DNA from: Macrostomum lignano
Lineage: Eukaryota
Assembly (NCBI GenBank): GCA_002269645.1
Contig: NIVC01001731.1
Coordinates: forward strand, 124,001 to 188,000
Direction: 5' to 3'
DNA: 64,000 nucleotides
The notes below the pieces were generated by a model that saw only the letters and a list, made by a program, of their open reading frames with translations, did not search any database and was not told the origin of the DNA. The translations under genes were made by a program, and so were the position numbers. This document shows, piece by piece, positions 3,091 through 64,000 of this stretch. The number at the start of each line of letters is the position of its first letter. Position 1 is the first letter of the stretch.

Positions 3091-3822
3091 TCCTCCGTGG
3101 CCGCCGCAGTTGTTTCCAGAATCGCGCAGGTGACCATTGTTCGCTCGATTCGCTGTTCCCCTTCAGCCATGAGACGGTGTTTCTGTTTTTTGTCAGGTGC
3201 CGAATTCTGAGCTGCCACCTGCCCTGTTTACTGTAACCGCCAACCATAAAAATCAAGGTCGCATTCTGTTTAAACCCTGTCTGCCCTGTTCCATCTCTCT
3301 GTCAGCCAGGCAGTTCCGGTTCTCTAATTGAGTTTATTTGGTTATTTGTATTGAACAGGCTCTGCCGCCCTGCTCATTCGCTTCATTCACGCTGCTTATT
3401 TCATTCACGTAGGCCAGGAGTCGGCAAGCTACGGCCCGCGAAGCCTCTCTTTCCCTCTCCTGTCTCCCCCCGTCTCTTATCTCTTTATTAGTCTCTAATC
3501 TCTTCTCTCCCTAGTAGGCCATATCAGGCAACCATCGGAATTACAGCTAACCTGTGCCCGCCATCCGTTCAACTCTTGTTGTTTTGATTGAAGAAGTAAA
3601 TTATTTATTTCTTTAATGCTAAATATATAATAGTTAAATTATTAATAGTAATAATTGCTATCTTTTTCTACCGCGTTGTTTTCCTCGCCGAGGCGAGGCG
3701 GAGTAGAATTTGATTAACCGAAAATGACCGAGGTTGTTGCTTTTTTATTCGATGCTTTCAAGTATCTGTTAAAAGACTTTCGTGAATGTGCTTCACTGCA
3801 GTTCTTGAAGGCAATGTCAATC

Positions 3823-4450
3823 AGATTCTCAGTTGCTGGGCCAGCCTCCCAGATCCTCAGTTGCTGGGCCAGCCTCCCAGATCCTCAGTTGCTAGGCCAG
3901 CCTCCCAGATCCTCAGTTGCTGGGCCAGCCTCCCAGATCCTCAGTTGCTGGGCCAGCCTCCCAGATCCTCAGTTGCTGGGCCAGCCTCCCAGATCCTCAG
4001 TTGCTGGGCCAGCCTCCCAGATCCTCAGTTGCTGGGCCAGCCTCCCAGATCCTCAGTTGCTGGGCCAGCCTCCTAAATCCTCAGTTGCTGGGCCAGCCTC
4101 CTAAATCCTCAGTTGCTGGGCCAGCCTCCTAAATCCTCAGTTGCTGGGCCAGCCTCCCAGATCCCCAGTTGCTGGGCCAGCCTCCCAGATCCCCAGTTGC
4201 TGGGCCAGCCTCCCTCGGTTGCTGGGCCAGCCTCACAGATCCCCAGTTGCTGGGCCAGCCTCCCAGATCTCCAGTTGCTGGGCCAGCCTCCCAGATCTCC
4301 AGTTGCTTGGCCAGCCTCACAGATCCTCAGTTGCTGGGCCAGCCTCCCAGATCCTCAGTTGCTGGGCCAGCCTCCCAGATCTCCAGTTGCTTGGCCAGCC
4401 TCACAGATCCTCAGTTGCTGGGCCACCAGCCTCCCAGATCCTCAGTTGCT
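3823..4450 (+). repeat. 28-bp minisatellite (GCTGGGCCAGCCTCCCAGATCCTCAGTT)n
   Basis: About 22 visible units; the same family recurs inverted at 59291-59470. Confidence 0.95.
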
Positions 4451-4674: not shown

Positions 4675-5811
4675 TCAGGCGGCCACTTGGCTTCCGGCTT
4701 TGCCAGACACCATCGGATGCAGCTCCATCGGCTCCTCAGCCTCTTCTATATTGGCATTGTTGTTGCCGTTGTTGTCGTTTCTGTCCATTTTACCGTCCTC
4801 ATCATCGTCGCCTTCGATTCGTTTGTCCTTCAGCGACTGGCTGTGCAGCAGGCGGGCCTTGCGCTCTTTGTTTAGGCAGCTGCAGAACGAGTCCAAGCAC
4901 ACCTCTAGAAATATGGTGTTGAAGAACATGTAGAGGAAGAAGTTGTGCGCTGAATTCAGCGTCAATAGCAGGTCGGTGACCTCGCGGGCGATCCGCTGTG
5001 CGTCTGTGCTGACCTCGTGATAGCCGAGGCCGTACAGAGTCATGGCCGCGTCGGGCAGGGCGAACACTATGAAGATGCAGATCACGATGATGAGCATGAG
5101 GGTGATGCGGTTCCGAGCAGCCAGTCGCCTGTTCGCCCTGGTCCGTCGCACGTTGACGATGATGCAGGCGTTCAGCACGATCAATAGCGCCAGAGGGGCG
5201 ATGCAGCGGAAGCTGGACTGGAAAATTGAATAGGCTCCGGCGAAGTGATTCTTCCACAGGTCCGTCACGTTCAAAGTGTAGCCGCCGTCAATCGCTGGCA
5301 CCTTGCGGTAGCGCAGGCCGATTGGCACGGTGAGCAGCAGGACGGTCAGGCCGATCACCAGGCACGCCGTGGTCGCCTTGGCAACGGTGAGGACGCCGCG
5401 ACACTCCGTCGGATACACAATCATTAGGAAGCGTTCGAAAGCGACTGCCACGGTCATCCAGGCTGCCACAGAGGAAGAATACTGCGACAGGAAGTAGCCG
5501 AACTGGTAGTAGTTGACGTAGATAAAACTGTCGCCACCGACGGTGAAGTACTTGCACAGTACGCTTGCGGTGTACATGAGATCGTTGATCAGCTTGATGA
5601 GGTCTCCGAATGCTAGCACCAGCAGGTAGATGTTAGTTGAAGTTCTCATCTTGGGCTTGACGAACACCATCAGGCAGAGAGTGTTGCCGGCGATGCCAAG
5701 TAGGCAGGCCAGCGGCATCAGGCCCGTGCCGATCACCAGCTGCACTATGGAATAGGCGCTGCTCTCGTTGCCATTGTCCGAGCTTCTGTTACTGTCGATC
5801 GGTGCCAGCAT
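4675..5811 (-). CDS. Intronless class A (rhodopsin-like) GPCR, FMRFamide/sex-peptide-receptor-like orphan peptide receptor, 378 aa
   Basis: Seven hydrophobic segments; GN in TM1 (GIAGN), LAFGD in TM2, ERF at the DRY position, TM7 NSAHNFFLY; N-terminal N-glycosylation sequons NRS and NES; GCCATG start context. Confidence 0.9.
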   Translation of the reverse strand: MLAPIDSNRSSDNGNESSAYSIVQLVIGTGLMPLACLLGIAGNTLCLMVFVKPKMRTSTNIYLLVLAFGDLIKLINDLMYTASVLCKYFTVGGDSFIYVNYYQFGYFLSQYSSSVAAWMTVAVAFERFLMIVYPTECRGVLTVAKATTACLVIGLTVLLLTVPIGLRYRKVPAIDGGYTLNVTDLWKNHFAGAYSIFQSSFRCIAPLALLIVLNACIIVNVRRTRANRRLAARNRITLMLIIVICIFIVFALPDAAMTLYGLGYHEVSTDAQRIAREVTDLLLTLNSAHNFFLYMFFNTIFLEVCLDSFCSCLNKERKARLLHSQSLKDKRIEGDDDEDGKMDRNDNNGNNNANIEEAEEPMELHPMVSGKAGSQVAA

Positions 5812-8745: not shown

Positions 8746-9777
8746 ATAGAAAACTCTTACCTAATATATTAGGTTGTGAAGCTAACAAAAATAAAAAGAC
8801 CCGAGGGCCGGACAGAGCTGCAGCTTCGCGGGCCGCATGTTGTCTAAATGGCCTGCAAACTCCGGCCCATACAAACTAATAAGCCAACTGAAAAGTACCG
8901 TAAAGTCCGTTAATTAGTGAAATCAAATTCAGTGAAAGATCAAATAACTCGCCTATAAAAAATTGTCAGAGCCGCTAATTCAGTTCCGTCAGCAGCAAAA
9001 AGGACATGAATTATAGTGAACTCAGACCTTACTGCGGTCTGGTGCAAAGCTATTGCAGTCTAGTAATATTCGAGTAGCTAATTATAACAACTTATAGTTA
9101 TTAACAACTAATAGCAAAACAGTCAACATAAATTTTAATTAAGCTCGCTCGCTACAAAGCAGTAAAAGTGGAATACCGCGTAAATGTGCTGAATTATAGC
9201 GTCCTTATACATGCTTGGACTTGACTGTAAAAACACGGGGGATTGGAGAGACAGAGGCAAAGCTGAAGAATTTCCTTTGACCATCAAAGGGAAAAAGCCA
9301 ATTCAATTCTGCTAGAAGCAGAAGTATCGATTTTCACAAGCTGCAGTTCCTATTTACTTCATAGGCTTGCGTTTCCTATTTAAATTTTGGCCCATTGGTT
9401 TGTTTTTTCAAATGTTTCTTCACGTTTCTTCTTGTTGTCTCTTCAAATGCATAGTTGACTTTTGATTTTCATCAAGCCACTGAACTGAATCGTTTGGCGG
9501 CACTCTGGTGGTGTCAGGAGTGAGGCATGGCCGCATGTGGCACTCTGGTGTGTCAGGAGTGAGGCTAGTGGCGGCACTCTGGTGGTGTCAGGAGTGAGGC
9601 TGGTGGCGGCACTCTGTGGTGTCAGGAGTGAGGCATGTGGAGGCACTCTGGTGGTGTCAGGAGTGAGGCATGTGGCGGCACTCTGGTGGTGTCAGGAGTG
9701 AGGCATGTGGCGGCACTCTGGTGGTGTCAGGAGTGAGGCATGTGGCGGCACTCTGGTGGTGTCAGGGGTGAGGCATA

Positions 9778-11431
9778 CAGTCATGCACAAAAGTAAGCAC
9801 ACCCCAAGCAAAAATTGAGAAAAACTGTTAAAATTTCTGAACCGTCAGCTGTATTACAACAAAACTGCATCACAATCATCCTTATTGACTGGCATTTATT
9901 TTGACACATCAAGCTTTGAAAAACTCTTTGTGGCTACGGAGCTACGGCAAAAAATGCTCAAACACACCTGTGCAAAAGTAAGTACACCCTGCCCTTTACT
10001 ACCAGTATAACCTCCTCTGTGCAGATGCGAGCCACCATAAGTACATTGCCAGCCGCCTCACTGCCTGTTACGTCACCAGCGACTTTAGTCCTGCTTGCCC
10101 TTGCCCTCAATCGGCTCAGCTACTGGTTTTCATGCTACTATAAAGCTCATGTGCAATGCAGCCGCATCATTGACTTGATACACGCCAGGACAATGCCAAG
10201 AGGCCAGGAGCTGTCAGTTCAGTTAAGAAATCGCATTGTAGCAGCTCACAATAGTGGCGATGGCTACAAGCGGATATCTGCTGCCTTCAATGTGCATGTA
10301 TCAACGGTTAGGCGCATCATCGCAAAGTACAAGCAGCACGGCACCACAGCATCTCTGCCTCGCAGTGGCCGGCCGAGTAAAATTTCAGCTCGCGCGCTGC
10401 GCAAACTCACGCAAGAGGTCAGCCAAAACCCGAATGCAACATCAGGCGAGCTGCAGCAGATGCTGAATGCAGCTGGCTTATTGCCGCACAGGACTACTGT
10501 TCGCCGAGCCCTGAACCGCGCGGGCCTCCGCAGCTGCATTCCAAGAAAAAAGCCTCTGATGCAGCAGCGACATCGCGATGCCAGGCTGCAGTTTGCTAAT
10601 GCGATGCTGAGCAAGCCAGACAGCTACTGGCAGTCAGTGCTTTGGACTGATGAAACCAAGATTGAGCTGTTCGGCAGGAATGAGAAGCAGCGCGTGTGGC
10701 GCAAGCCGAACACCGCATTTGAGCAGAAACACCTGAAGCCGACAGTCAAGCACGGAGGCGGCAGCATCATGCTGTGGGGCTGCTTTGCAGCTGCTGGCAC
10801 CGGCAGGCTGATGCACATCACCGAGAAGATGAATTCGGCTGTGTATCAGCAGATCCTTGATGAAAACCTGCAGCCATCAGTGCATGACCTCGGTCTTGGA
10901 CGAGCTTGGACACTGCAGCAGGACAATGACCCCAAGCACACGAGCGCTGCAACTCGGCGATGGCTGCAGCAGAGGCGCATCAAGGTCATGGAGTGGCCAA
11001 GCCAGAGCCCTGACCTGAATCCGATCGAGATGCTGTGGACGGATCTCAAGAAGATGGTTCACGCGAGGAAGCCGAAGAATCTGCGGGAATTGGCCGAATT
11101 CTGCATCGAGGAGTGGCGGAAAGTGCCCGCTGAGAGGTGCGCTGCGCTGGTGAATGGCTACCGCAAGCGGCTCTTGGCTGTGGTGGCTGCACGAGGTGGA
11201 GCTACAAAGTATTAAGACAGGGTGTACTTACTTTTGCACAGGTGTGTTTGAGCATTTTTTGCCATAGCTCCGTAGCCACAAAGAGTTTTTCAAAGCTTGA
11301 TGTGTCAAAATAAACGCCAGTCAATAAGGACCACTGTGATGCAGTTTTGTTGTAATACAGCTGACGGTTCAGAAATTTTAACAGTTTTTCTCAATTTTTG
11401 CTTGGGGTGTACTTACTTTTGTGCATGACTG
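9778..11431 (+). mobile_element. Full-length Tc1/mariner DNA transposon of IR/DR (Sleeping Beauty/Frog Prince/Passport-like) type, 1654 bp
   Basis: TA at 9776-9777 and 11432-11433. TIRs 9778-9991 and 11218-11431 (214 bp each, a few mismatches), each with an outer and inner direct repeat (core TGCA(C)AAAAGTAAGYACACCC). AATAAA in the right TIR. Intact transposase between the TIRs. Confidence 0.97.
10193..11215 (+). CDS. Tc1-family DD34E transposase, 340 aa, uninterrupted
   Basis: ATG at 10193 (MPRGQELS...). HTH region with GRPSK linker and RKKP; catalytic LWTDETK, QQDNDPKH and SPDLNPIE with 34 residues between the second D and E; ends ATKY-stop as in Sleeping Beauty. Confidence 0.96.
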   Translation: MPRGQELSVQLRNRIVAAHNSGDGYKRISAAFNVHVSTVRRIIAKYKQHGTTASLPRSGRPSKISARALRKLTQEVSQNPNATSGELQQMLNAAGLLPHRTTVRRALNRAGLRSCIPRKKPLMQQRHRDARLQFANAMLSKPDSYWQSVLWTDETKIELFGRNEKQRVWRKPNTAFEQKHLKPTVKHGGGSIMLWGCFAAAGTGRLMHITEKMNSAVYQQILDENLQPSVHDLGLGRAWTLQQDNDPKHTSAATRRWLQQRRIKVMEWPSQSPDLNPIEMLWTDLKKMVHARKPKNLRELAEFCIEEWRKVPAERCAALVNGYRKRLLAVVAARGGATKY

Positions 11432-12179
11432 TATGTGGCGGCACTCTGGTGGTGTCATGAGTGAGGCATATGTGGCGGCACTCTGGTGGTGTCATGAGTG
11501 AGGCATATGTGGCGGCACTCTGGTGGTGTCAGGGGTGAGGCATGTGGCGGCACTCTGGTGGTGTCAGGAGTGAGGCATGTGGCGGCACTCTGGTGGTGTC
11601 ATGAGTGAGGCATATGTGGCGGCACTCTGGTGGTGTCATGAGTGAGGCATATGTGGCGGCACTCTGGTGGTGTCAGGAGTGAGGCATGTGGCGGCACTCT
11701 GGTGTGTCGAGAGTGAGGCAGATAGCCGAAGGAGCCTGTTCAAGTGGCATTCTGTATGCTCGCCCACACAATAGCATATATAGCAAGAATTTGCATATCT
11801 TACTGATGTGGAAGCAAAATGAAGTAGCTAATTCTATTTTTAACGGCAAGCCAGATTTCGCTTGCTCCAATCAATCAGTATGTTAATTACAGCCTAGTGT
11901 TCTAGGAATAGAATTGCCTATTATAATACCGCGCTACATATATAGCCGGAGAAGCCAATTGACAATATTTCCTAATCTAAGGTATAGTTAGATTAGGTTT
12001 AGATTTAGTTACTGAATATCTTGAATTATTTCAATCAATTAGTTATAATTAGTTCTACTATTAGAGCTACTAGTCCATTTTCCATCAAAATTTAACATTA
12101 TTGCACAATTGCACTATAGCATTTTCCAAGCCAAGCTGAGCCTGAGAGCAAGCCATCAATCAATACTTATTGGCTTATG

Positions 12180-17884: not shown

Positions 17885-20800
17885 GCAGACAGACAGACAG
17901 CCTCACCTCCGGCTGGCCGGCCCTGACCAGGGCGATCTCCACGGTAGCAACACAGAAGTAGGCGACAGCCAGGCGTTGCAGAACGCCAGGAATGCGCAGC
18001 TGATCGAGTGGGACGTCTGAAAATGTTTTTTTTGGCGTAAATTCGTTTGACGTTTGATTTGTATGACAGATTGAGCTGCAGATTGCTCAGGGTTGCTCAG
18101 GATTGAATTAGGAATTTTCAGTTTGGAAACTCGGATTGAAGTTTAGAGAGGCTCTGCTCAGTGCTCACTTCGCGATGTCAGGCAGACTCCCAGCGCGAAC
18201 AGGATGGCGCTTCGGCGGCACACAGACAAGAAGGCGTCGCGCTTGCTGGCGCCGCGTCTCAGACTACGGCGCAAGGTGTAGCCTATGGCGGTGCCCATGA
18301 TGAACACGAACCTGAAGTTTGATCCGATTAAAAACAGTCAGTGCACCGCAACTGTCAGACCCTAGATCTCCGATCCCAGATCCCAATCCAGATCCCAGAT
18401 CCTAGACCCCAAACCAGATTCCAGATCCTAGATCCCAGATCTCCGATCCCAGATGTCAGTACCCGATGGGGACTAACCCCAGTTACTAACCAGGGAAAGA
18501 CCAAATCAGCCACAGTCAGCCCATTCCAGGTGCTGTGCTGAAAGAACCAATACCCGCCGCCGCCGTAATTAACGAACACCATCACGATAAGGCACAGGCC
18601 GCGGAAAGTGTCAAGACAGCGGAGCCGGCCAGGCCGACGGCCGCCAGAATGAGCCGACTGGGAGGACTGCGGCTGCTGGCTGCCCTGACCAGATGCCCGC
18701 TGGTACTGGCTGTGAATTGCCAGCGAGTCGGACTGGTTAATGTTGGCGTCAACGCTGCCCAGGTCTTGCTGGAATTCGAAAATGCTTGGGTGTCGTTTTA
18801 AAGGTGAAAATGCCGCTTTGAAGCTGCCCGGGTGCCCGTAGGCGGAAAATAAGAGTCAGATGTCAGGTGTGAAAGGCATCAGGAAACCGAGGTATCAGAA
18901 ATTCGAAGCGTCAGGAGTGCCAGAACTCGGGCGTCAGGAGTGCCAGAACTCGGGTGTCGGGAGTGCCAGAACTAGGGTGTCGGGAGTGCCAGAACTCGGG
19001 TGTCAGGAGTGCCAGAACTCGGGTGTCAGGAGTGCCAGAACTAGGGTGTCGGGAGTGCCAGAACTAGGGTGTCGGGAGTGCCAGAACTCGGGTGTCAGTA
19101 GTGCCAGAACTTGGGTGACAGGAGTGCCAGAACTCGGGTGTCGGGAGTGCCAGAACTCGGGCGTCAGGAGTGCCAGAACTCGGGTGTCAGGAGTGCCAGA
19201 ACTCGGGTGTCGGGAGTGCCAGAACTCGGGCGTCAGGAGTGCCAGAACTCGGGTGTCAGGAGTGCCAGAACTCGGGTGCCAGGAGTGCCAGAACTCGGGT
19301 GTCAGGAGTGCAGGGCGAACTAGGATTTCAAAAGTGTCATTACCTGGGTGTCAGGAGTGCCAGAACTCGGTTGTCAGGAGTGCCAGAACTTGGGTATCAG
19401 GAGTGCCAGAACTCGGGTATCAGGAGTGCCAGAACTTGGGTATCAGGAGTGCCAGAACTTGGGTATCAAGAGTGCTAGAACTCAAGTGTCAGGAGTGCCA
19501 GAACTCGGGTGTCAGGAGTGCCAGAACTTGGGTATCAGGAGAGCCAGAACTCGGGTGTCAGGAGTGCCAGAACTATATGGTATTAACTTTACCTGAGCCA
19601 CATACTCAACCTGCGAGCCGGCCTGCATACGACGCCAAAAGTCGTACCTGAATAGTAAAAAAATAGAAATGAGTAACGCAACTGTACGTGTATACTAGAA
19701 TATTAGATTGATTAAAATTAGCGGATACCACAGCAACTCACTCTCTGATGGTGTAGAAAGCAGCTCTTAGTAGAAAAAATAGCAGAATAACGCTGAGACA
19801 GATATAGAGGGCTGCAAAATGGCACACTTTGCAAACTGTGAGTAGCTTATTGAATCGGTTCTATGCAAGCTTTGTTTAAGAATCTTACGATTCTGTAGAT
19901 TCGCATTTGAAATAAAAAAAAATACTACAATTTATACACTGTATATCCCTACTTTTAGGGCGTGTATCTTAGGGTTTGGAATCTGGGATCTAGGATCTGG
20001 GATCTAGGATCTGGGATCTAGGATCTGGGATCTAGGATCTAGGATCTGGGATCTAGGATCTTAGGGTTCGGAATCTGGATCTTAGGGTTTGGAGTCTGGA
20101 TCTTATGGTTTGGAATCTGGATTATAGGGTTTAGAATCTGGATCATAGGGTTTAGAATCTGGACCTAAGGGTTTGTAATCTGGATCTTAGGGTTTGGAAT
20201 CTGGATTTTAGGGTTCGGAATCTGGATCTTAGGGTTTGGAATCTGGATTTTAGGGTTTGGAATCTGGATCTTAGGTTTCGGAATCTGGATCTTAGGTTTC
20301 GGAATCTGGATCTTAGGTTTCGGAATCTTGATCTTAGGTTTCGGAATCTGGATCTTAGGTTTCGGAATCTGGATCATAGGGTTTGGAATCTGGATCTTAG
20401 GGTTTGGAATCTGGATCATAGGGTTTGGAATCTGGATCTTAGGGTTTGGAATTTGAATATTATATTTTGGTGTCCTAGAATTTTAGACCCAATTTCACGG
20501 AAAAAGTTTCGAATCTCACGGATCAGAAAGTCGGGCCCATCTGAACGGGTCACCAGCGCGCAGAGGGGGCCGAGCGGGTCGGGTCCCAGGTCTGAGTTGT
20601 TGCTTGGCCCAATATTTAACTCGTAGGAGCCCGACTCGTGGAAACGAAAGTCCTTACTGAAAAGTTGATATTTAAATTAGCAGTATAAGTTATGCATAGG
20701 CAGTTATTGAAGACCTATTAAAGAGCTAATTAAAGCATGTCTATATGCTGGTGGCCCAATCTTTGCATATATTAACCAAAATTATGACACATTCAGATTT

Positions 20801-33746: not shown

Positions 33747-33911
33747 NNNNNNNNNNNNNNNNNNNNNNNNNNNNNNNNNNNNNNNNNNNNNNNNNNNNNN
33801 NNNNNNNNNNNNNNNNNNNNNNNNNNNNNNNNNNNNNNNNNNNNNNNNNNNNNNNNNNNNNNNNNNNNNNNNNNNNNNNNNNNNNNNNNNNNNNNNNNNN
33901 NNNNNNNNNNN
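33747..33911. other. Assembly gap (165 N)
   Basis: Run of N. Confidence 1.
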
Positions 33912-35740: not shown

Positions 35741-38700
35741 CCTTCTAACTCCAGTCAACACTTTCTCTACCCTCACTCCACCACTCCATCTTACCCTAAC
35801 CTACTCTTATCTACTTATTCATCTATCTACCATTCTACCTTCATTTATCTAACCTCATCTATTTACCCTCATCTATCTACACTTATCTACCCTCATCTAC
35901 CCTCATCGATCTACTCATCTACTCTCACCTATGTACCCTTATCTATCCTCATCTACCTTCATCTATCTACCATTATCTACCTTCCTCATCCACCCTCATC
36001 TCCCTTCATCTATCTACCCTCATCTATATAAGACTCATGTAACGCATAAACAAAAAGCAGAAATGCAGCGCCAGCCTCACCGCAGGTAGCGCCTCCGAGC
36101 CAGGAACATGCGCACCCAGGCCTGGATTCGGCAGGAGGCCCGTCGCATCGCCAGGTAGCGCTTGCGATAGAAATAGCCGCGCCAGCGCTTCTGAATCACT
36201 ATGATCTTCTTCGTGAGCTGCCGGTCGCGCTCCTGTCGGTCGCAGAATGGTGATTCACATGGCGTGATGGATTGTGGAATTCCTAATATTCACACATCAC
36301 ATATTCACATACTCACACAGCGTCGCACTCACAAAAATGATTCATTGATAAATACTTTCTGTGATTTCACACCCCTTTGGGTTCACAGATTAACACAACT
36401 ATAACTATGGCTTCACAGATTCACAAAAATATGGGTTCACAGATTCACATAACTATGGGTTTACAGATTCACACAACTATGGGTTCACAGATTTACACAA
36501 CTGTGGTTTCACAGATTCACACAACTATAACTATGGCTTCACAGATTCACAAAAATATGGGTTCACAGATTCACATAACTATGGGTTCACAGATTCACAT
36601 AACTATGGGTTTACAGATTCACACAACTATGGGTTCACAGATTTACACAACTGTGGTTTCACAGATTCACAAAACTATAACTATGGCTTCACAGATTCAC
36701 AAAAATATGGGTTCACAGATTCACAAAAATATGGGTTCACAGATTCACACAACTATGGGTTCACAGATTCACACAACTGTGGGTTCACAGATTCACACAA
36801 CTGTGGGTTCACAGATTCACACAACTATAACTATGGCTTCACAGATTCACAAAAATATGGGTTCACAGATTCACAAAAATATGGGTTCACAGATTCACAT
36901 AACTATGGGTTCACAGATTCACACAACTATGGGTTCACAGATTCACACAACTGTGGGTTCACAGATTCACACAACTATAACTATGGCTTCACAGATTCAC
37001 AAAAATATGGGTTCACAGATTCACAAAAATATGGGTTCACAGATTCACATAACTATGGGTTTACAGATTCACACAACTATGGGTTCACAGATTCACACAA
37101 CTGTGGGCTCACAGATTCACACAACTATAACTATGGCTTCACAGATTCACACAACTATGGGTTCACAGATTCACACAACTGTGGGTTCACAGATTCACAC
37201 AACTATAACTATGGCTTCACAGATTCACAAAAATATGGGTTCACAGATTCACAAAAATATGGGTTCACAGATTCACATAACTATGGGTTTACAGATTCAC
37301 ACAACTATGGGTTCACAGATTCACACAACTGTGGGTTCACAGATTCACACAACTATAACTATGGCTTCACAGATTCACAAAAATATGGGTTCACAGATTC
37401 ACAAAAATATGGGTTCACAGATTCACATAACTATGGGTTTACAGATTCACACAACTATGGGTTCACAGATTCACACAACTGTGGGTTCACAGATTCACAC
37501 AACTATAACTATGGCTTCACAGATTCACACAACTATGGGTTCACAGATTCACACAACTATGGATTCACAGATTAACACAACTATGGGTCCACAGATTCAC
37601 AAAAATATGGGCTCACAGATTCACATAACTATGGGTTTACAGATTCACACAACTATGGGTTCACAGATTCACACAACTGTGGGTTCACAGATTCACACAA
37701 CTATAACTATGGCTTCACAGATTCACACAACTATGGGTTCACAGATTCACACAACTGTTGGGTTCACAGATTCACAAAACTATAACTATGGCTTCACAGA
37801 TTCACAAATATATGGGTACACAAATTCACAGAAATCAAGGTTCACAGATTTACAAAATATGGGTTCACAAATTCAGAATTCAAGGTTCACAAATTCACAG
37901 AAATCAAGGTTCACTGATAATTTATTCACAAACCTAACAACAACCCTCACCTGCTCCAAGAAGACATCGTGAGCGTCCTTGAGAAACACCTTAGTCTTGC
38001 CCAGCTGCACATCCTGGCCGGACAGCACCTGCTTGCAGATAGTGGCGCAGGCCTCCCGAAGATTCCTGCACACTTTAGAAGTTGGAATCCCGTCCACTAG
38101 GACCCGGTACCGATCCACAAAGTCGGCAAACTGATGCCGGATGGGATAGCCAGCCCGGCGGATTCTGATGGTCTCCATCATGCCTGAGTACCTGAGCTGG
38201 CGGACGCACAGCTCCCGGTCAAAGGTCAGTGGCTTCTTCAACTCGTTCGGCTTGATGCAGCGAACAAAGAATGGCTGACACTGGGTGAGAGTCTTCATCA
38301 GGGCTTCCAGAGATTTCTTGAATTGCAAACTCAAAGTCGGAGCTCGCTTCCTGGTCTCCACACCCTGCGGGAATGGCATTGTTCTCAGTAAGATCTTTGT
38401 TAATAAAAGTACATCAATGACAGACAAAAGTACATCTTTGTATTGCTGTCTTAAATTTTATTAAAGCAGGACAGGACAGAGACAGAAAGAGAGAGGAGGG
38501 ATTTAGTGCAGAAACTTTCAGTATTTGCATTGCACACTACTACTGAGCTGAGCAATCAGTAGTATATTTAGTGCATCCGTTTATATATATACGCACATGT
38601 ATTTTTAGTAACTCAAAACAAGAAATTTGACAACAAAAGCTGCATAAAAATGTTCCGTTAAAGACAAACGCGACACCCACTCTTTGTTGGCCATCCTGGA

Positions 38701-41700
38701 ATTACACGAATATTTCAGCAAATCTTTAATCAATTATTATCGAAGCATTTCAAATATGCTAAGCTTACTACTACTTACATTGTATTTGTAAGTAGCAATC
38801 CATGTTTACATTTACACCTTTAATATTCGAGAATCGTTTAGTTTCAAAAATTAAATGCAGTAAAAATAATTAGAAATACTTACAAACTAGTTTGAGATAC
38901 TTCACCAACACCACTGGCTACTGAGAGTAATAAGCAGAGGGTTATGATTGACTACAAGGTTAGTGACTTGAAAAAATATTTAATTAAAAGACCAATAAAG
39001 GAAATAAGTGTAAAAAAACAAAAGGTAACTCTAATTCGTAACCCTTTTTACCCGATATTCCATGAACCCGATATTCCACGAACCCAATACTTCATGAACC
39101 CGATAGTCCATGAACCCGATATTCCACGAACCCGATACTTCATGAACCCGATAGTCCATGAACCCGATACTTGATGAACTCGATACTTGATGAACCCGAT
39201 AGTCCATGAACCCGATAGTCCATGAACCCGATAGTCCATGAACCCGATATTCCATGAACCTGATACTTGATGAACCCGATAGTCCATGAACCCGATATTC
39301 CACGAAACCGATACTTCATGAACCCGATAGTCCATGAACCCGATAGTCCATGAACCCGATAGTCCATGAACCCGATATTCCACGAACCCGATACTTCATG
39401 AACCCGATACTTGATAAACCCGATAGTCCATGAACCCGATATTCCACGAACCCGATACTTCATGAACCCGATATTCCACGAACCTGATACTTGATGAACC
39501 CGATAGTCCATGAACCCGATATTCCACGAACCCGATACTTGATGAACTCGATACTTGATGAACCCGATACTTGATGAACCCGATACTTCATGAACCCCAT
39601 ACTTCATGAGCTCGATATTCCATGAACCCGATATTCCACGAACCCGATACTTCATGAACTCGATACTTGATGAACCCGATACTTCATGAACCCCATATTT
39701 AATGAACTCGATACTTCATAAAACCGATACTTCATGAACCTGATATTTAATGAACCCGAGCTTCCATAAACCCGATATTTAATGAACCTGATACTCCATG
39801 AACCCGATATTTAATGAACCTGATACTCCATGAACCCGATATTTAATGAACCCGAACTTCCATGAACCAGGACAAACGGCAGTTTTCAACACTCACCATA
39901 GCAAAGTCCCTGGCAAACAGACTCTTCAGGAACTTATTGCTGCTCTCCTGAATCAGCTTGACCAGATCAGCGCTGAAGGTGTCCCTGTTCTTGTCCAAGA
40001 ATCCCTGGGCACTGTAGTACACGTCTCCCGCGAAATGCCGCAACCCGAAAGCTTTGGTAACGGCGGCTCTCGGCTGCAGGTAGAGCGAATTAGACGAGTG
40101 ATTCTGGTGCAGCTTGTGCAGCATCGTGTCGTCTGTGCCCTTGGGGAACTTGGCCTCCTCATCAACCAGCGACAGGATATTCATAGGCTTAACAGCGATC
40201 AAATCCAGCGTGTCCTGGTTATCAATGAACTCGATGTGTTTCCAAGAAATGCCCTCCGAGTTGTACTCCTCCTGCTCCAGTTTGAAGATGTGCCTAACAA
40301 AGAACTGCTGCAAATTCTCGTTGGCAAAGTTGATGCACAACTGTTCAAAGCTGTTAACGCCGAAATTTTCGAAGCCGAAAATGTCCAGCACGCCAATAGA
40401 GTTCTGATAGTACTTCTCGGCGGACCGGCCCTTGTAGATCGCCGCGTTGATTTTGATAACAATCCACACAAACAGTCTGCCATAGATACCCTTGACCAGG
40501 GCGTCCTTGACATCCGTGGCGTAGTCTACAGACATCGGCGAGGTGACTGTGTCGCCTCTAGTGAAGATGGTCTTGGTGGTCAGGGCGTCGCGAAGGTTGA
40601 CGGGGTTGCAGCCCAGGAGCCGGGCCGCTCTGGCCAGCTCCCTGTCGCCGACCACCTCGCTGGCATCGATGTTGTCCACCACGGTCGATGCGTAGCGAAC
40701 GTTGCCTAGGTGCAGAATTGCGGCTAACAAGCCGTGGATGTCCAAGGAGTCCCCGTCGCTGAAGTTTAACACCTGGATTGGAAGGATAGGTAGATTGTGG
40801 AAAATAGCACATAATGAACCCCTAGACAATCCCAACCCCAATCCCACAGAATCCCACACGCAATCCTACAGAATCCCAACCCCAATCCTACAGAATCCCA
40901 CACCCAATCCCAGAATCCCACACCCAATCCCACAGAATCCAATACCCAATCTCACACCCAATCCCACAGAATCCCACACCCAATTCCCTAGAATCCCACA
41001 CCAATCCCAACAGAATCCAATACCCAATTTCACACCCAATCCCACAGAATCCCACACCCAATCCCAGAATCCCACACCCAATCCCACAGAATCCCACACC
41101 CAATCCCACAGAATCCAATACCCAAATCCCACACCCAATCCCACAGAATCCCACACCCAATCCCACAGAATCCAATACCCAAATCCCACATCCAATCCTA
41201 CAGAATCCCACACCCAATCCCACAGAATCCCACACCAATCCCACAGAATCCAATACCCAATCCTACAGAATCCCACACCCAGTCCCACAGAATCCCACAC
41301 TCAATCTCACAGAATCCCACACCCAATCCTACAGAATCCCACACCCAATTCCCTAGAATCCCACACTCAATCTCACAGAATCCCACAGAATCCCACACCC
41401 AATCCCACAGAATCCCACACCCAATCCCACAGAATCCCACACCCAATTCCCTAGAATCCCACACCAATCCCAACAGAATCCAATACCCAATTTCACACCC
41501 AATCCCACAGAATCCCACACCCAATCCCAGAATCCCACACCCAATCCCACAGAATCCCACACCCAATCCCACAGAATCCCACACTCAATCTCACAGAATC
41601 CCACAGAATCCCACACCCAATCCCACAGAATCTTATACAAAATCCCACAGAATCTCACAGAATCGCCAACCCCAAGCCCCAGCCTTGCGCACCTTCATGG

Positions 41701-44700: not shown

Positions 44701-47277
44701 TATACTACTTTCTTTCAAGGGCGTATCGTAGCAAATAACCGTCGGATTTTGCAATAAGACGTCAAAAAGTCGGTTTTGGCCATAGACTAAAACTCCATCA
44801 CAGAAGCTTTACATCCAGTGTTTTGGTGGTACAGCGTTTTGCCATGCTAAGCTGAAATCCTATAAAGTAAAATGAGGTTCTACCATAGACTTAAAGACTA
44901 CAGACACAGTAAACTTCCCTAGCTCTTAAAAACCAAATCTAATATAGATAAAAATGATGTTTTAATGTTAAAATTGTTTAAAACCTATATTTCCTATAGA
45001 CTTACAACTTTGGATATCAGTTTTCTAACTTTTAAGATCAGAGTTTATTAGTAAGTTTTTTTTCGAAAAATGGTTGACGAAGCAAAAAAACAACAGAAAA
45101 CTCATACTAACAAGAATATTATCATACCGGCCTTCAAAAAATTCTTAGAAACCAGCCATCTACGGAGAAGTCACAGTTTTTAACTAACCTGGCGAATAAT
45201 TACAGTTTTAGCAGACAGAGGCAACCGATGATGCCCCAGCGTGGATGCTGAGCTTGAAGAAGCTCGAGAGGACGTCCGCTTCACCAGCTGCAGCATCTGT
45301 GAGCAAACCAGGAAGCTTGGGGAGGGGCCGCAGATTCTGTCCAAGAGTTCTAATCTTTCAAACCGGTGCGATAGAGCTGCCCAAGGCTGCACCAACTTAT
45401 ATATTCAGGATTGCGACCTTGCAGCCTTGAATCTCCGCTGTCTAAACCAGGCACCGCTTCTACCGAGAGCCTATAAAAAAGATCTTCAATTATTTAGGCT
45501 GACTAGGGGCTAATTAATTATTTATTTATGCGGCGACGGCAGAGACTGGCTGAGGAACAGAGGTAATTGAGTTTTGGCCACCTGTCTATCTCTGCCTGTT
45601 TCTATTTCTATTGTATTCTGAAACTCTCAAGCAGACACTGAAACCCTGACAAGGACTGGTTCCAGCGATTCCGACAGAGTCATTTTATCATTTTAGTCTT
45701 AAAGAGATTAAAAAAATAGCTAAACAAATTTTGGCATCACGTGACACTAGATTAAACACTACAGTTTCTTCAACTCGACCTTTTAAGCTTTACTACTGTA
45801 AGTTGTATCACTAGCTTGTGCGACTAAAATATCCTATGTAAACTCATTGCAATGAGCTGGTTGAATGATCAACTTCAGATCCAAGGTATATGACCAACTT
45901 TTGATGAATGACAATGGATAGACTGACAGGCTGATGACCAACACAAATGACCAGTTGATGACCAACACAAATGACCAGTTGATGACCAACTAAATGTGAC
46001 CGGTGGGTGACCAACTAAATTTGACCGGCTGATGACCAAATAATATGACAGATTTATGAGCAATTCTAAATGACTAGCAATGGATCGCAATATAAAATCA
46101 GACAGTGTGGTCAGCATAAAAAAACGCTAAGAGCATTAAAACTTCGAGTGCTACAGAAATATCGATAGAGCAACTCAATTTAATGGTACGCTCGCTACAA
46201 GACATTCGATATTAACTATATGGCCCACTGTATATTAGAACTAGCAGTTGAAAAAAACTATAAGGGCTGACAAAAGCTTTTAAGCATTTAATGCTTGGGT
46301 TAGGGTAGGCAAAACAAAAGTACAAGCTAGGGGGGGGGGCAGCCCAGCGGTAAACTTGTCCGACTCTCCCGCCAGTGACCCCTGGTTCGATTCCGGAGCG
46401 GCCACGTTTATTTGGGGCTTGTGGGCATGAAAACTGGCTAACCACCAAAGCACAGAGAGTAAACAAGCCGCTGAACATGTGTGAGCGATGCCTGCATGTG
46501 TATTCGTGCGCGTGGGGCTGCTCAGGTGGGCTCAGGCGGAATGAGCATGACTACTTGCCTCCTAGCTAGCTAACGAACGAACAAACAAACAAACTGACTA
46601 ACTACCTGACTAACTGACTAACTAACATACTAACTATTTAACTAGCTAACTAATTAACTAACAAACATACTAACTAATTAACTAGCTAACTAACTAACTG
46701 ACTAACTAACTAGCTAACTAACTAACTAACTAACTAACTAACTGACTAACTAACTAGCTAACTAACTAACTAACTAACTAACATACTAACTAACTAACTG
46801 ACTGACTAACTAACTAACTAACTAACTAACTGACTGACTAACTAACTAACTAACTAACTAACTGACTAACTAACTAGCTAACTAACTAACTAACATACTA
46901 ACTAACTAACTAACAAACATACTAACTATTTAACTAGCTAACTAATTAACTAACAAACATACTAACTAATTAACTAGCTAACTAACTAACTGACTAACTA
47001 ACTAGCTAACTAACTAACTAACTAACTAACTAACTGACTAACTAACTAGCTAACTAACTAACTAACTAACTAACTGACTGACTAACTAACTAACTAACTA
47101 ACTAACTGACTGACTAACTAACTAACTAACTAACTGACTAACTAACTAGCTAACTAACTAACTAACATACTAACTAACTAACTAACAAACATACTAACTA
47201 TTTAACTAGCTAACTAATTAACTAACAAACATACTAACTAATTAACTAGCTAACTAACTAACTGACTAACTAACTAG

Positions 47278-47311
<34 letters not shown>

Positions 47312-47325
47312 GACTAACTAACTAG

Positions 47326-47358
<33 letters not shown>

Positions 47359-47899
47359 ATACTAACTAACTAACTGACTGACTAACTAACTAACTAACTA
47401 ACTAACTGACTAACTAACTAACTAACTAACTAACTGACTAACTAACTAGCTAACTAACTAACTAACATACTAACTAACTAACTGACTGACTAACTAGCTA
47501 ACTAACTAACTAACTAACTAACTAACTGACTAACTAACTAACTAACTAGCTAACGAACTAACTTATTAACTTACAGACTAACTAGCAAGTTAATTGATTA
47601 AGCAGCGAAACAAAAACCCGATATAACATTTATCCATTCCCTACAGGAAAACTGTCATATTTCCAGGCATTTAAGCATGCTCTTGATTTTTAGAAAACAA
47701 CAATTAAACACACGATAGCAAATAAATGGAAAAAGTGACTTATAAAATCATAAACGGGAAACCAACTGCTAAAGCTACAAAAGCACTGCCTACACAGATT
47801 CAAAAGTGCATTCAGCCGCGATAATAACGGTGTTAATTAAACTTTTGAAATAAAAACGAAACACACATAGGTAATTCTTACCTCGTGAAGCACAACCAT
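33912..47899 (-). CDS. MYO7A: Unconventional myosin VIIa: motor, IQ motifs and start of coiled coil; truncated by the gap
   Basis: Phase-consistent exons 47899-47882 (MVVLHE), 44538-44425, 43722-43501, 42745-42514, 42018-41693, 40772-39897, 38364-37951, 36232-36081, 35557-35230, 34017-33912. GDHIW..FDVPIGA N-terminus, GESGAGKT P-loop, [14 protein letters not shown] (class VII signature), [23 protein letters not shown] and tandem IQ motifs. Confidence 0.96.
34490..35140 (+). repeat. AAGGATAGAACAA-type purine-rich degenerate repeat in MYO7A intron
   Basis: Visible recurring units. Confidence 0.85.
36380..37920 (+). repeat. 24-bp minisatellite (GGGTTCACAGATTCACACAACTAT)n with higher-order variant blocks, MYO7A intron
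   Basis: About 60 units; explains the 531-aa [11 protein letters not shown]. Confidence 0.96.
39060..39860 (+). repeat. 16-bp minisatellite (CATGAACCCGATAGTC)-type, MYO7A intron
   Basis: Visible units. Confidence 0.92.
40820..41660 (+). repeat. About 22-bp minisatellite (AATCCCACAGAATCCCACACCC)n, MYO7A intron
   Basis: Visible units; G-run rich on the transcribed (minus) strand. Confidence 0.93.
42050..42480 (+). repeat. 34-bp minisatellite (GAGATTAGATCTTAGAATCTCACTCACAATATGC)n, MYO7A intron
   Basis: Visible units. Confidence 0.92.
42860..42990 (+). repeat. 26-bp minisatellite (AGGAAGCGATTTCTAAGAAGTGTGTC)n with degenerate continuation
   Basis: Four to five clear units, decaying towards 43400. 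Confidence 0.8.
43850..44390 (+). repeat. 20-bp minisatellite (CCAATCTACCCCAAACACTA)n, MYO7A intron
   Basis: Visible units. Confidence 0.92.
46335..46600 (+). mobile_element. tRNA-derived SINE
   Basis: Head with A-box-like GGCAGCCCAGCGGTAAA and B box GGTTCGATTCC (46384-46394), no acceptor-stem pairing, about 180-bp body, ending in a simple-repeat tail that runs into (ACTA)n. Confidence 0.6.
46590..47575 (+). repeat. About 1-kb (ACTA)n microsatellite
   Basis: Tetranucleotide array with actg/agct/acat variants in recurring blocks. Confidence 0.96.
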
Positions 47900-55312: not shown

Positions 55313-55529
55313 GGCCGCTGAATTGTTGCGAACAACCAAATATGCGTGCGCCGGTATTGTAGAAATAAGTGATGAAGCCGCTATGGAAGCTGAGTGTTTA
55401 CTGGGGCTGTAAGAGAAATAATTTAGCAGCAGATGAGTTTAATTAAATGTATAATAAAGAGTGCAGATATTAAGGTTTACTAGCTAGACCATTGCAGGAT
55501 CTAGAGATGTTGTAACTGCCTGTAGATCG

Positions 55530-56890
55530 ATAACCATCTAGTCTGTAGATTTATAAACATCTAGTCTGTAGATCTATAAACATCTAGTCTGTAGATCTAT
55601 AACCATCTAGTCTGTAGATCTATAAACATCTAGTCTGTAGATCCATAAACATCTAGTCTGTCGATCCATAAACATCTAGTCTGTAGATCCATAACCATCT
55701 AGTCTGTAGATCCATAAACATCTAGTCTGTCGATCCATAAACATCTAGTCTGTAGATCTATAACTATTTAGTCTGTAGATCCATAAACATCTAGTCTGTA
55801 GATCCATAAACATCTAGTTTGTAGATCCATAAACATCTAGTCTGTAGATCTATAAACATCTAGTCTGTAGATCTATAAACATCTAGTCTGTAGATCCATA
55901 AACATCTAGTCTGTAGATCTATAAACATCTAGTCTGTAGATCTATAAACATCTAGTCTGTAGATCTATAACCATCTAGTCTGTAGATCTATAAACATCTA
56001 GTCTGTAGATCCATAAACATCTAGTCTGTCGATCCATAAACATCTAGTCTGTAGATCCATAACCATCTAGTCTGTAGATCCATAAACATCTAGTCTGTCG
56101 ATCCATAAACATCTAGTCTGTAGATCTATAAACATCTAGTCTGTAGATCTATAAACATCTAGTCTGTAGATCCATAAACATCTAGTCTGTAGATCTATAA
56201 ACATCTAGTCTGTAGATCTATAAACATCTAGTCTGTAGATCTATAACCATCTAGTCTGTAGATCTATAAACATCTAGTCTGTAGATCCATAAACATCTAG
56301 TCTGTCGATTCATAAACATCTAGTCTGTAGATCCATAACCATCTAGTCTGTAGATCCATAAACATCTAGTCTGTCGATCCATAAACATCTAGTCTGTAGA
56401 TCTATAACTATTTAGTCTGTAGATCCATAAACATCTAGTCTGTAGATCCATAAACATCTAGTTTGTAGATCCATAAACATCTTGTCTGTAGATCTATAAA
56501 CATCTAGTCTGTAGATCTATAAACATCTAGTCTGTAGATCTATAAACATCTAGTCTGTAGATCCATAAACATCTAGTCTGTAGATCCATAAACATCTAGT
56601 TTGTAGATCCATAAACATCTAGTCTGTAGATCTATAAACATCTAGTCTGTAGATCTATAAACATCTAGTCTGTAGATCTATAAACATCTAGTCTGTAGAT
56701 CCATAAACATCTAGTCTGTAGATCTATAAACATCTAGTCTGTAGATCTATAAACATCTAGTCTGTAGATCTATAACCATCTAGTCTGTAGATCTATAACC
56801 ATCTAGTCTGTAGATCTATAACCATCTAGTCTGTAGATCCATAACCATCTAGTCTGTAGATCTATAACCATCTAGTCTGTAGATCTATAA
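55530..56890 (+). repeat. 23-bp minisatellite (CATCTAGTCTGTAGATCTATAAA)n
   Basis: About 58 well-conserved units between RPS10 and the WBP1-like gene. Confidence 0.97.
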
Positions 56891-57185
56891 AAAAACTAAT
56901 TTTTATTCCAGCCTCTACATTGCAATAAAACAAGCCACGCACTAAACTTTGCTATATATAAGAACAAAATGTGAAAAATAATGCAAGACAAAGCCGCAAC
57001 TAATTTTTTGTCTCCAATGAAATCCAGAGCGCGAACAAGCGCCAGGCCAAAATTGTTTTTATTTAGTTTTAAATAACTCCCGGCTCAAACATCAAACCCC
57101 GCTGCTATTCGATGCCGGCAGGGCATCGCTAAGCACGCATCCCAGTGAGTCATCAGTTTCTAAATTATTTCCATTCGAGAGTTTC

Positions 57186-62335: not shown

Positions 62336-64000
<1,665 letters not shown>

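What the first reader, a model, noticed from the sequence alone, without database searches (positions are those of the whole stretch)
9778..11431. Apparently intact Sleeping Beauty-like IR/DR Tc1 transposon in an invertebrate-style genome
Seen: perfect TA TSD, 214-bp TIRs each with inner and outer direct repeats, an uninterrupted 340-aa DD34E ORF and a poly(A) signal in the right TIR. Known: this IR/DR architecture and blocks such as DETKIELFG, PTVKHGGGSIMLWGCFAA, DNDPKHTS, EWPSQSPDLNPIE and terminal ATKY characterise Sleeping Beauty/Frog Prince/Passport, which come from vertebrates; the first two had to be reconstructed from dead copies. Inference: a naturally intact, possibly active member with its own DR core (TGCACAAAAGTAAGYACACCC) is a candidate new gene-transfer tool and a candidate horizontal transfer. 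The few TIR mismatches mean it is not brand new.
Basis: partly seen in the sequence, partly recalled or inferred. Interest (0 to 1): 0.72.

Follow-up and report, generated by a model that had tools for sequence, protein, structure and literature searches.

The report
Intact Tc1 transposon in flatworm genome
This is a complete, structurally intact copy of an ordinary cut-and-paste Tc1-type "jumping gene" sitting in a repeat array of what is most likely a Macrostomum flatworm genome; it is a new member of a very well-known kind, is not a true Sleeping Beauty, and nothing points to a recent jump from vertebrates.

Summary
Window 9778-11431 is a 1654-bp element flanked by a TA duplication. It has 214-bp inverted ends (6 mismatches), each with an outer and an inner direct repeat 185 bp apart.

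It is a Tc1/mariner element of the DD34E/Tc1 family, long-end IR/DR group. The only near-identical sequence found is a second copy in Macrostomum lignano (96.3% over the whole element), so the host is probably that flatworm or a close relative.

- The transposase is 56.7% identical to the SB100X catalytic domain and never groups with it, so it is not in the Sleeping Beauty clade.
- IR/DR elements are already known from invertebrates (Minos, S, Paris, Bari).
- Naturally intact and active relatives are common (ZB, hundreds of intact fish copies).
- The "own" repeat core is shared with metagenomic relatives.
- The nearest non-Macrostomum relative is only 66% identical, and the codon composition looks like the host's, so there is no sign of recent horizontal transfer.

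Whether this copy can still move is untested; I put it at about 35-40%.

The parts
9495..9775 (.). Host 35/37-bp minisatellite array, left part (insertion target)
   Evidence: TRF rows 9495-9776 and 11432-11720 describe one array split by the element.
9776..9777 (.). TA target-site duplication, left copy
   Evidence: Read directly from the sequence. The joined flanks recreate the CATATG junction of neighbouring 37-bp units.
9778..11431 (+). Whole Tc1-type IR/DR transposon, 1654 bp
   Evidence: It is 96.3% identical over its full length to a second TA-flanked copy in M. lignano contig NIVC01003507.1 (L001).
9778..9991 (+). Left terminal inverted repeat (214 bp), starting CAGT
   Evidence: Reported by the repeat finder as pair I1. 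It has 6 mismatches in 214 positions against the right end.
9784..9804 (+). Outer direct repeat, left end (TGCACAAAAGTAAGCACACCC). C9798 is a change specific to this copy.
9969..9989 (+). Inner direct repeat, left end (TGTGCAAAAGTAAGTACACCC)
   Evidence: It lies 185 bp from the outer repeat.
10139..10144 (+). TATAAA, 54 bp upstream of the start codon. Putative core promoter in the 201-bp leader (9992-10192); this is an inference.
   Evidence: It is conserved in the second copy: no difference is listed there.
10193..11215 (+). Transposase reading frame, 340 aa plus TAA
   Evidence: Pfam finds HTH_SB (aa 1-52), HTH_Tnp_Tc3_2 (aa 70-137) and DDE_3 (aa 149-300). The AlphaFold model has mean pLDDT 87.9.
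10649..10651 (+). Codon for catalytic D153
   Evidence: The column is invariant in the 40-sequence alignment.
10922..10924 (+). Codon for catalytic D244
11027..11029 (+). Codon for catalytic E279 (34 residues after D244)
11218..11431 (-). Right terminal inverted repeat (214 bp)
11220..11240 (-). Inner direct repeat, right end
11309..11314 (+). AATAAA hexamer, a possible poly(A) signal 94 bp after the stop codon
   Evidence: Its function is inferred only.
11405..11425 (-). Outer direct repeat, right end
11432..11433 (.). TA target-site duplication, right copy
11434..11720 (.). Host minisatellite array, right part

Best explanation
Window 9778-11431 is one full-length, structurally autonomous copy of a Tc1/mariner DNA transposon (DD34E/Tc1 family, long-end IR/DR group). 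It belongs to a lineage resident in Macrostomum flatworms.

Inferred from what is known of Tc1-family elements: the 340-aa transposase binds, through its paired-like PAI+RED domain, the outer and inner direct repeats in each 214-bp end. It pairs the two ends, and its RNase-H-like DDE domain (D153/D244/E279) cuts the element out. It then pastes the element into a TA, which becomes duplicated.

Shown by the sequence: this copy landed in the TA of a CATATG variant of a host 35/37-bp minisatellite.

The copy is moderately young, at about 1.4% change per site in its ends. It keeps the family-conserved residue at eight of the nine amino-acid differences from the second copy that can be polarised. 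It could therefore still encode a working enzyme, but that is untested; my estimate is about 35-40%. The 0.9 confidence given for this explanation refers to what the element is, not to its activity.
For: Anatomy:
- TA duplication, 214-bp ends at 97.2% identity, four repeat cores, a 340-aa frame and DD34E spacing.
- The empty site can be reconstructed from neighbouring repeat units.

Protein:
- Pfam finds HTH_SB, HTH_Tnp_Tc3_2 and DDE_3.
- There is a gap-free 224-aa alignment to the SB100X catalytic domain 5CR4, E = 3e-82.
- The AlphaFold model has pLDDT 87.9. Its best structural matches are 5CR4 (TM 0.85 on the target), then full-length Mos1 transposase; Pax paired domains match the N-terminus.
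- All 46 invariant columns of a 40-sequence alignment are kept.

Mobility as a family:
- A second TA-flanked copy sits at an unrelated site in M. lignano, 96.3% identical.
- Between the copies dN/dS = 0.23 and dS = 0.066, similar to the 5-6% non-coding divergence. The coding region was therefore under purifying selection during part of the divergence.

State of this copy:
- Of 12 amino-acid differences, this copy has the family-conserved state at 8. The other copy carries G196V in the glycine box and P61L in the GRPR-like motif.

Host:
- A GPCR in the window is closest, among named proteins, to a planarian receptor (42%).
- The M. lignano contig around the second copy shows the same dense minisatellite architecture as the window.
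Against: - Activity is untested.
- This copy has L123M, a change of its own, in the otherwise invariant PLL interdomain linker.
- It has one change in its left outer repeat (C9798) and 6 mismatches between its ends.
- It shares five deviations from residues conserved in at least 85% of relatives with the other copy: P98, C115, E211, M266 and R334.
- An in-frame upstream ATG at 10025 could add 56 residues to the DNA-binding end if it were transcribed.
- Only two copies could be examined, and copy number is unknown.
- No protein identical to this one is on record in the public assemblies searched, so there is no evidence of expression.
- The host species rests on the transposon itself. No Macrostomum protein was found for the three host genes tested.
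Confidence: 0.9

Rival explanations
1. The copy is an intact-looking but dead or severely weakened relic. The frame is open only because the insertion is fairly recent, and the enzyme, the ends or both no longer support transposition.
For: - 6 mismatches in 214 positions between the ends, one of them in the left outer binding repeat.
- L123M in the invariant PLL linker, and five family-specific departures from highly conserved residues.
- The sister copy also has an open frame yet carries clearly damaging changes (G196V, P61L), so an open frame alone proves little.
- No identical protein is on record in public assemblies.
Against: - All invariant residues and the DDE triad are kept.
- 8 of 9 polarisable differences are in the conserved state in this copy.
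- dN/dS of 0.23 shows recent selection for function in the lineage.
- All four repeats are present.
Confidence: 0.55
2. The element arrived recently by horizontal transfer from a vertebrate (fish or frog) Sleeping Beauty-type element.
For: - The closest named relatives are fish Tc1-like transposases, and the closest solved structure is SB.
- 55-59% identity to fish elements is about as high as the host's myosin-VIIa motor domain is to vertebrates (60-68%). That is high for a transposase if inheritance had been purely vertical, so some ancient transfer somewhere in the family is plausible.
Against: - No relative above 66% identity exists outside Macrostomum among 5.8 billion protein clusters, in the JGI metagenome contigs or in the viral contigs.
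- Its closest relatives are metagenomic or read-assembly sequences of unknown host. Bootstrap support is 84% for the sister P0004, which comes from a brackish microbial mat; the wider grouping with P0014 and P0051 has 42%.
- The element's GC3 (0.65) lies at the low end of the range of the host reading frames (0.64-0.80).
- Two diverged sub-lineages already exist in Macrostomum.
Confidence: 0.03
3. It is a domesticated transposase gene of the host rather than a mobile element.
For: The frame is intact and dN/dS is below 1.
Against: - Both 214-bp ends with their binding repeats and the TA duplication are retained.
- It sits inside a minisatellite whose empty site can be reconstructed.
- A second copy lies at an unrelated locus, antisense within an importin-11-like gene.
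Confidence: 0.01
4. It is an assembly contaminant, for example fish DNA.
For: Fish-type Tc1 sequences do contaminate other records, for example a transposase labelled E. coli IS630 (P0069).
Against: - The element is embedded with exact junctions in a host minisatellite that continues on both sides within a 64-kb window.
- The best fish hit is below 60% identity.
- An independent M. lignano assembly holds a 96% copy.
Confidence: 0.01

Closest known systems
Sleeping Beauty (SB10/SB100X), the reconstructed salmonid Tc1 IR/DR element
   Same: - 340-aa transposase with identical numbering of the catalytic residues (D153/D244/E279).
- Gap-free alignment of the catalytic domain, and the best structural match.
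- PAI+RED DNA-binding domain (Pfam HTH_SB).
- Ends of about 214-230 bp with an outer and an inner repeat, a TA target, and CAGT termini.
   Different: - Only 56.7% identical in the catalytic domain, and never groups with SB (0 of 100 bootstraps).
- The repeat core differs: TGYRCAAAAGTAAGYACACCC here. From memory, and not compared with a tool, SB's repeat is of the GTTGAAGTCGGAAGTTTACATACAC type.
- It is a natural copy, not a reconstruction, and the host is a flatworm.
Unnamed metagenomic and read-assembly Tc1 elements: P0004 (IMG 3300040801, brackish microbial mat), P0014 (Logan SRR12900990), P0051 (ENA ERZ27264416), P0009 (Logan)
   Same: - Closest relatives, at 60-66% identity. P0004 is sister with 84% bootstrap support.
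- P0004's contig starts TA|CAGTGCTGCTCAAAAGTTAGCACACCCCC and has its inner repeat exactly 185 bp further in.
- P0009's contig has TGYKCAAAAGTAAGTGAACCC repeats 186 bp apart.
   Different: - 34-40% protein divergence.
- Hosts are unknown.
- The contigs are too short to show both complete ends.
ZB (native zebrafish) and the SB-like / ZB-like clades of Jia et al. 2022; Passport; Frog Prince
   Same: - Same DD34E/Tc1 family, total length of about 1.5-1.7 kb, a transposase of about 340 aa and ends of 180-300 bp (PMC9777934).
- Natural intact or active copies exist (PMC7913693 abstract).
   Different: - Identity to every fish or amphibian hit is 59% or less.
- Platyhelminthes is not among the hosts listed for SB/ZB homologues in the text read (Arthropoda, Mollusca, Echinodermata and Cnidaria only), and the held supplements contain no mention of Macrostomum or Platyhelminthes.
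Invertebrate IR/DR Tc1 elements: Minos, S, Paris, Bari3 (Drosophila)
   Same: Ends of about 250 bp with direct repeats, a DD34E transposase and invertebrate hosts (PMC4120734).
   Different: They did not appear among the 120 best hits, so they are presumably more distant than the fish-type elements. They were not compared directly.
DD37E/Mosquito (MS) element already described in Macrostomum lignano
   Same: Same superfamily, and the same host as the second copy (PMC10379824).
   Different: It is a different family: DD37E spacing, about 1.3 kb, and ends of variable length (19-203 bp).

Membership tests
Tc1/mariner superfamily, DD34E/Tc1 family | TA target-site duplication | tested here: met
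   TA at 9776-9777 and 11432-11433. The empty site is reconstructed from neighbouring repeat units. The second copy is also TA-flanked.
Tc1/mariner superfamily, DD34E/Tc1 family | DDE catalytic triad with 34 residues between the second D and the E | tested here: met
   D153, D244 and E279. All three are invariant columns in the 40-sequence alignment. Pfam DDE_3 matches at E = 3e-16.
Tc1/mariner superfamily, DD34E/Tc1 family | Bipartite paired-like (PAI + RED) helix-turn-helix DNA-binding domain with a GRPR-like motif between the halves | tested here: met
   HTH_SB covers aa 1-52 and HTH_Tnp_Tc3_2 covers aa 70-137. The model has six helices in aa 9-109 and matches Pax5/Pax6 paired domains structurally. 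SGRPSK lies at aa 58-63.
Tc1/mariner superfamily, DD34E/Tc1 family | RNase-H-like catalytic fold | tested here: met
   Foldseek best matches are 5CR4 (SB catalytic domain, TM 0.85 on the target), then Mos1 and SETMAR.
Tc1/mariner superfamily, DD34E/Tc1 family | Cut-and-paste transposition activity | not testable with these tools
   This needs an excision/integration assay or insertion-polymorphism data.
IR/DR structural group of Tc1 elements | Long terminal inverted repeats of about 200-250 bp | tested here: met
   214 bp, 97.2% identical.
IR/DR structural group of Tc1 elements | Two direct repeats (outer and inner) within each end | tested here: met
   Four cores, 185 bp apart within each end, against a chance expectation of 0.01. 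The arrangement is conserved in the second copy and in relatives.
IR/DR structural group of Tc1 elements | Transposase binds the direct repeats | not testable with these tools
   This needs a band-shift or footprinting experiment.
Sleeping Beauty clade in the strict sense (Jia et al. 2022) | High identity to SB (more than 80% coding-sequence identity within the clade; 68% DDE-domain identity even to the sister SB-like clade) | tested here: not met
   56.7% identity to the SB100X catalytic domain. This falls just below the 58-61% DDE-domain identity Jia et al. report between the SB and ZB groups, i.e. no closer than between clades.
Sleeping Beauty clade in the strict sense (Jia et al. 2022) | Groups with SB100X in a phylogeny | tested here: not met
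   Neighbour-joining tree of the catalytic domain: 0 of 100 bootstraps group it with SB. It groups with P0004 in 84 of 100.
ZB, ZB-like, SB-like, Passport and Frog Prince clades | Groups with the named reference transposase | not tested
   No usable reference protein was at hand; the held supplement is a gapped DNA alignment. No fish or amphibian hit exceeds 59% identity, which makes membership unlikely.
Already catalogued repeat family (Repbase/Dfam) | Identity to a deposited consensus | not testable with these tools
   No repeat library is available. Literature searches found no DD34E IR/DR element described from Macrostomum.

The most novel reading that the evidence does not exclude
The family is still transposition-competent in Macrostomum. 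This near-consensus copy would then encode an active enzyme and be the first native IR/DR Tc1 element from a flatworm. Such an element could be used as a homologous vector for transgenesis or insertional mutagenesis in the regeneration model M. lignano. In addition, the matched changes in both ends between the two copies would reflect a real end-to-end conversion process that keeps long Tc1 ends identical.
Probability: 0.3. Interest if true: 0.5.

Novelty: new member of a known kind. Interest (0 to 1): 0.28.

Why it matters
- If active, it would give the Macrostomum community a native cut-and-paste vector, and a warning that endogenous transposase might mobilise related vectors.
- It would extend the documented host range of fish-type IR/DR Tc1 elements to Platyhelminthes.
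- As a general gene-transfer tool it is unlikely to compete with SB100X, piggyBac or ZB.
- As biology it is ordinary: intact Tc1 copies with this architecture are known in hundreds of genomes.
- The one mildly unusual point is that seven differences between the two copies occur as matched complementary changes in both ends. That implies concerted evolution of the ends.

Tried and rejected
- Exact-sequence look-ups of the window's transposase, GPCR and RPS10 found nothing on record. The window is therefore not from an annotated assembly in the collection, or the gene models differ.
- Homologue searches with the GPCR and a myosin-VIIa exon were meant to pin down the host species. They returned no Macrostomum protein. 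The best named GPCR hit was planarian (42%) and the best myosin hits were 63-68%. The host rests on the transposon match plus shared genome architecture.
- Scans of JGI metagenome contigs and viral contigs for close relatives gave at best 56-59% identity and nothing in viral contigs. This rejects the idea of a recently shared element or a viral vector within those data.
- A search of the literature for the sample accessions of the nearest relatives identified only one: IMG 3300040801, a brackish microbial-mat co-assembly. The hosts remain unknown.
- The supplements of Jia et al. 2022 contain no mention of Macrostomum or Platyhelminthes and no usable reference proteins; the file read is a gapped DNA alignment.
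- A search of the window and of 21 kb of M. lignano sequence for further copies or derivative fragments found only one unexplained 31-nt fragment.
- The upstream-extended gene model (424 aa in M. lignano; the listed window ORF runs 398 aa from a GTG) was rejected as the real protein. All relatives start at the MPRG/MPRS methionine, and the M. lignano model starts at an ATG created by a substitution inside the left end.
Full report
**Observation.**
The element runs from C9778 (CAGTCATG...) to G11431 (...CATGACTG) and is 1654 bp long, with TA on each side at 9776-9777 and 11432-11433.

It interrupts a 35/37-bp minisatellite that spans 9495-11720. Removing the element and one TA gives GAGGCATATGTGGCGG. 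That is the junction found four times in neighbouring 37-bp units, whereas the 35-bp units read GAGGCATGTGGCGG. The insertion and its target TA are therefore directly supported.

The two ends (9778-9991 and 11218-11431) are 214 nt each with 6 mismatches. A 21-nt core, TGYRCAAAAGTAAGYACACCC, occurs exactly four times: once outer and once inner in each end, 185 bp apart. Shuffled sequence gives an expectation of 0.01 matches.

AATAAA lies at 11309-11314.

**What it is.**
- Pfam finds HTH_SB (aa 1-52), HTH_Tnp_Tc3_2 (aa 70-137) and DDE_3 (aa 149-300).
- The catalytic residues are D153, D244 and E279, which gives DD34E spacing.
- The catalytic domain aligns without a gap to the Sleeping Beauty SB100X crystal structure 5CR4, E = 3e-82.
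- An AlphaFold model built on 40 homologues has mean pLDDT 87.9. Its N-terminus holds six helices in two helix-turn-helix halves, followed by a mixed alpha/beta core.
- The best structural matches are 5CR4 (TM 0.85 on the target), then full-length Mos1 transposase, SETMAR, and Pax5/Pax6 paired domains for the N-terminus.

It is a Tc1/mariner element of the DD34E/Tc1 family with the IR/DR end architecture.

**Host.**
The best protein hit is a 424-aa Macrostomum lignano model, 96% identical. Its locus in assembly GCA_002269645.1 holds a second complete, TA-flanked copy at an unrelated site. That copy lies antisense inside an importin-11-like gene and is 96.3% identical over the whole element.

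The window's own proteins are not on record. Searches with a GPCR and a myosin-VIIa exon from the window found no Macrostomum protein. The best named GPCR hit is planarian at 42%.

The 21 kb around the M. lignano copy shows the same unusual architecture as the window: minisatellite arrays every few kb and a tetranucleotide (ACTA/CTAA)n array of 1.4 kb, against about 1.0 kb in the window. I conclude that the host is probably M. lignano or a close relative, but this rests mainly on the transposon itself.

**Relationship to known families.**
- Outside Macrostomum the nearest proteins are 66% identical (P0004, a brackish microbial-mat co-assembly), 63% (a Tara metagenome) and 60-61% (read assemblies). 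Named fish and amphibian Tc1-like proteins are 59% or less.
- Identity to the SB100X catalytic domain is 56.7%, no higher than to any other fish-type element. None of the 120 best hits exceeds 62.5% identity to SB.
- In a neighbour-joining analysis of the catalytic domain, the two Macrostomum copies group together in 100 of 100 bootstraps, with P0004 in 84 of 100, and with SB in 0 of 100.
- Jia et al. 2022 give more than 80% coding-sequence identity within SB, 68% DDE-domain identity between SB and SB-like, and 58-61% between the SB and ZB groups (PMC9777934). This element is therefore a separate lineage and not a Sleeping Beauty in their sense.
- The repeat core is not private to it. P0004's contig begins TA|CAGTGCTGCTCAAAAGTTAGCACACCCCC and has its inner repeat exactly 185 bp further in. 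P0009's contig has equivalent repeats 186 bp apart.

**State of this copy.**
The two Macrostomum copies differ at 61 alignment columns (58 substitutions and one 3-bp insertion/deletion): 12 of 214 in the left end, 11 of 201 in the leader, 27 of 1023 in the coding region and 11 of 216 in the right end.

In the coding region dS = 0.066 and dN = 0.015, so dN/dS = 0.23. Synonymous divergence matches the non-coding divergence, while replacement sites were constrained. Part of the divergence therefore happened in functioning lineages.

I polarised the 12 amino-acid differences using 118 relatives:
- The window copy has the conserved state at eight: H19, P61, R167, R170, A175, G196, P228 and R298. 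The evidence for R167 and R298 is weaker than for the others.
- It has the derived state at one: L123M, in the otherwise invariant PLL interdomain linker.
- Three differences cannot be polarised.
- The M. lignano copy carries G196V in the glycine box and P61L in the GRPR-like motif, so it is probably impaired despite its open frame.

The window copy keeps all 46 invariant columns. It shares five family-specific departures from highly conserved residues with its sister copy: P98, C115, E211, M266 and R334.

With the sister copy as reference, all six mismatches between its ends are its own changes, four in the left end and two in the right. One of them (C9798) lies in the left outer repeat. That is about 1.4% change per site since the two ends were last identical.

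**Expression signals (inference only).**
- TATAAA at 10139-10144 lies 54 bp before the start codon and is unchanged in the sister copy. A start site about 30 bp downstream would exclude the upstream ATGs at 10025 (in frame), 10132, 10149 and 10156.
- The frame stays open upstream to 9920. This explains the over-long gene models.

**Horizontal transfer.**
I found no evidence for a recent event:
- There is no close relative in any other named organism, in JGI metagenome contigs or in viral contigs.
- The element's GC3 of 0.65 lies at the low end of the range of host reading frames in the window (0.64-0.80).
- Two sub-lineages already exist in Macrostomum.

The 55-59% identity to fish elements is comparable with the 60-68% of the host's myosin-VIIa motor domain to vertebrates. 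That is high for a transposase. Older transfers somewhere in this clade are therefore plausible, as is usual for Tc1/mariner.

- IR/DR architecture is not vertebrate-specific. S, Minos, Paris and Bari of Drosophila belong to the group, and SB and Frog Prince are indeed reconstructions (PMC4120734).
- Naturally intact and active relatives are common. ZB is a native active element (PMC7913693 abstract), and about 350 intact SB/ZB-type copies are reported.
- Invertebrate hosts reported for that group are Arthropoda, Mollusca, Echinodermata and Cnidaria. Platyhelminthes is not listed there, and the supplements do not mention it.
- A different Tc1/mariner family (DD37E/MS) is already described from M. 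lignano.
- Literature searches found no description of this DD34E element. Repbase and Dfam could not be consulted.

**Verdict.**
The feature is real and was accurately described. It is a new member of a well-known kind, not a Sleeping Beauty, and not a demonstrated horizontal transfer. Structural intactness gives it a moderate chance of activity, which I estimate at 35-40%. Its practical interest lies mainly in flatworm genetics.

**A side observation.**
Seven of the twelve left-end differences between the two copies are mirrored by the complementary change at the matching right-end position (chance P about 3e-10). Each copy's own ends are meanwhile 97-99% identical. The ends of this family therefore evolve in concert. 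The mechanism is unknown.

Noticed in passing
window 9826/11383, 9831/11378, 9851/11358, 9858/11351, 9895/11314, 9937/11272, 9949/11260 (compared with L001 2835-4491): Seven differences between the window copy and the M. lignano copy occur as matched complementary changes in both ends (chance P about 3e-10). Each copy's own ends are 97-99% identical. The long ends seem to evolve in concert; the mechanism is unknown.
   Followed up: partly
whole window (for example 56-722, 3822-4450, 18910-19574, 36366-37875, 46562-47584, 55520-56891, 62610-63662); L088: The window is exceptionally rich in minisatellite arrays (units of 12-160 bp) and long tetranucleotide arrays: 72 tandem-repeat rows in 64 kb. 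The M. lignano contig around the second copy has the same architecture.
   Followed up: partly
window 33747-33911: A run of 165 N, which is an assembly gap.
   Followed up: no
window 4675-5811 (-), 57186-57638 (-), 37873-38427 and 39843-40859 (-): Host genes: a single-exon rhodopsin-type GPCR (best named hit planarian GCR046, 42%), ribosomal protein S10, and myosin-VIIa-like motor-domain exons separated by an intron filled with a 16-bp tandem repeat. None has a Macrostomum protein on record in the collection.
   Followed up: partly
protein P0069 (hit list): A typical fish-type Tc1 transposase (339 aa, 55% identical to the query) is labelled 'IS630 family transposase [Escherichia coli]' in NCBI. 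This is probably eukaryotic contamination of a bacterial record.
   Followed up: no
L001 3001-4275 / L088 10001-11275 (M. lignano NIVC01003507.1): The annotated M. lignano protein (424 aa) starts at an ATG created by a C-to-T change inside the left end and reads through the leader. This is an annotation artefact. The copy lies antisense inside an importin-11-like gene.
   Followed up: yes
L088 8468-8498: A 31-nt fragment, 97% identical to the element's leader (window 9993-10023), lies 1.3 kb upstream of the M. lignano copy. Its origin is unexplained.
   Followed up: no
proteins P0002, P0003, P0071, P0073 (Hemibagrus guttatus): P0002 (sequence read) is a chimaera of two different Tc1 transposases fused in one model. 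P0003, P0071 and P0073 are similarly over-long (550-576 aa) and probably the same kind of artefact. These look like gene-prediction artefacts over nested transposons.
   Followed up: no
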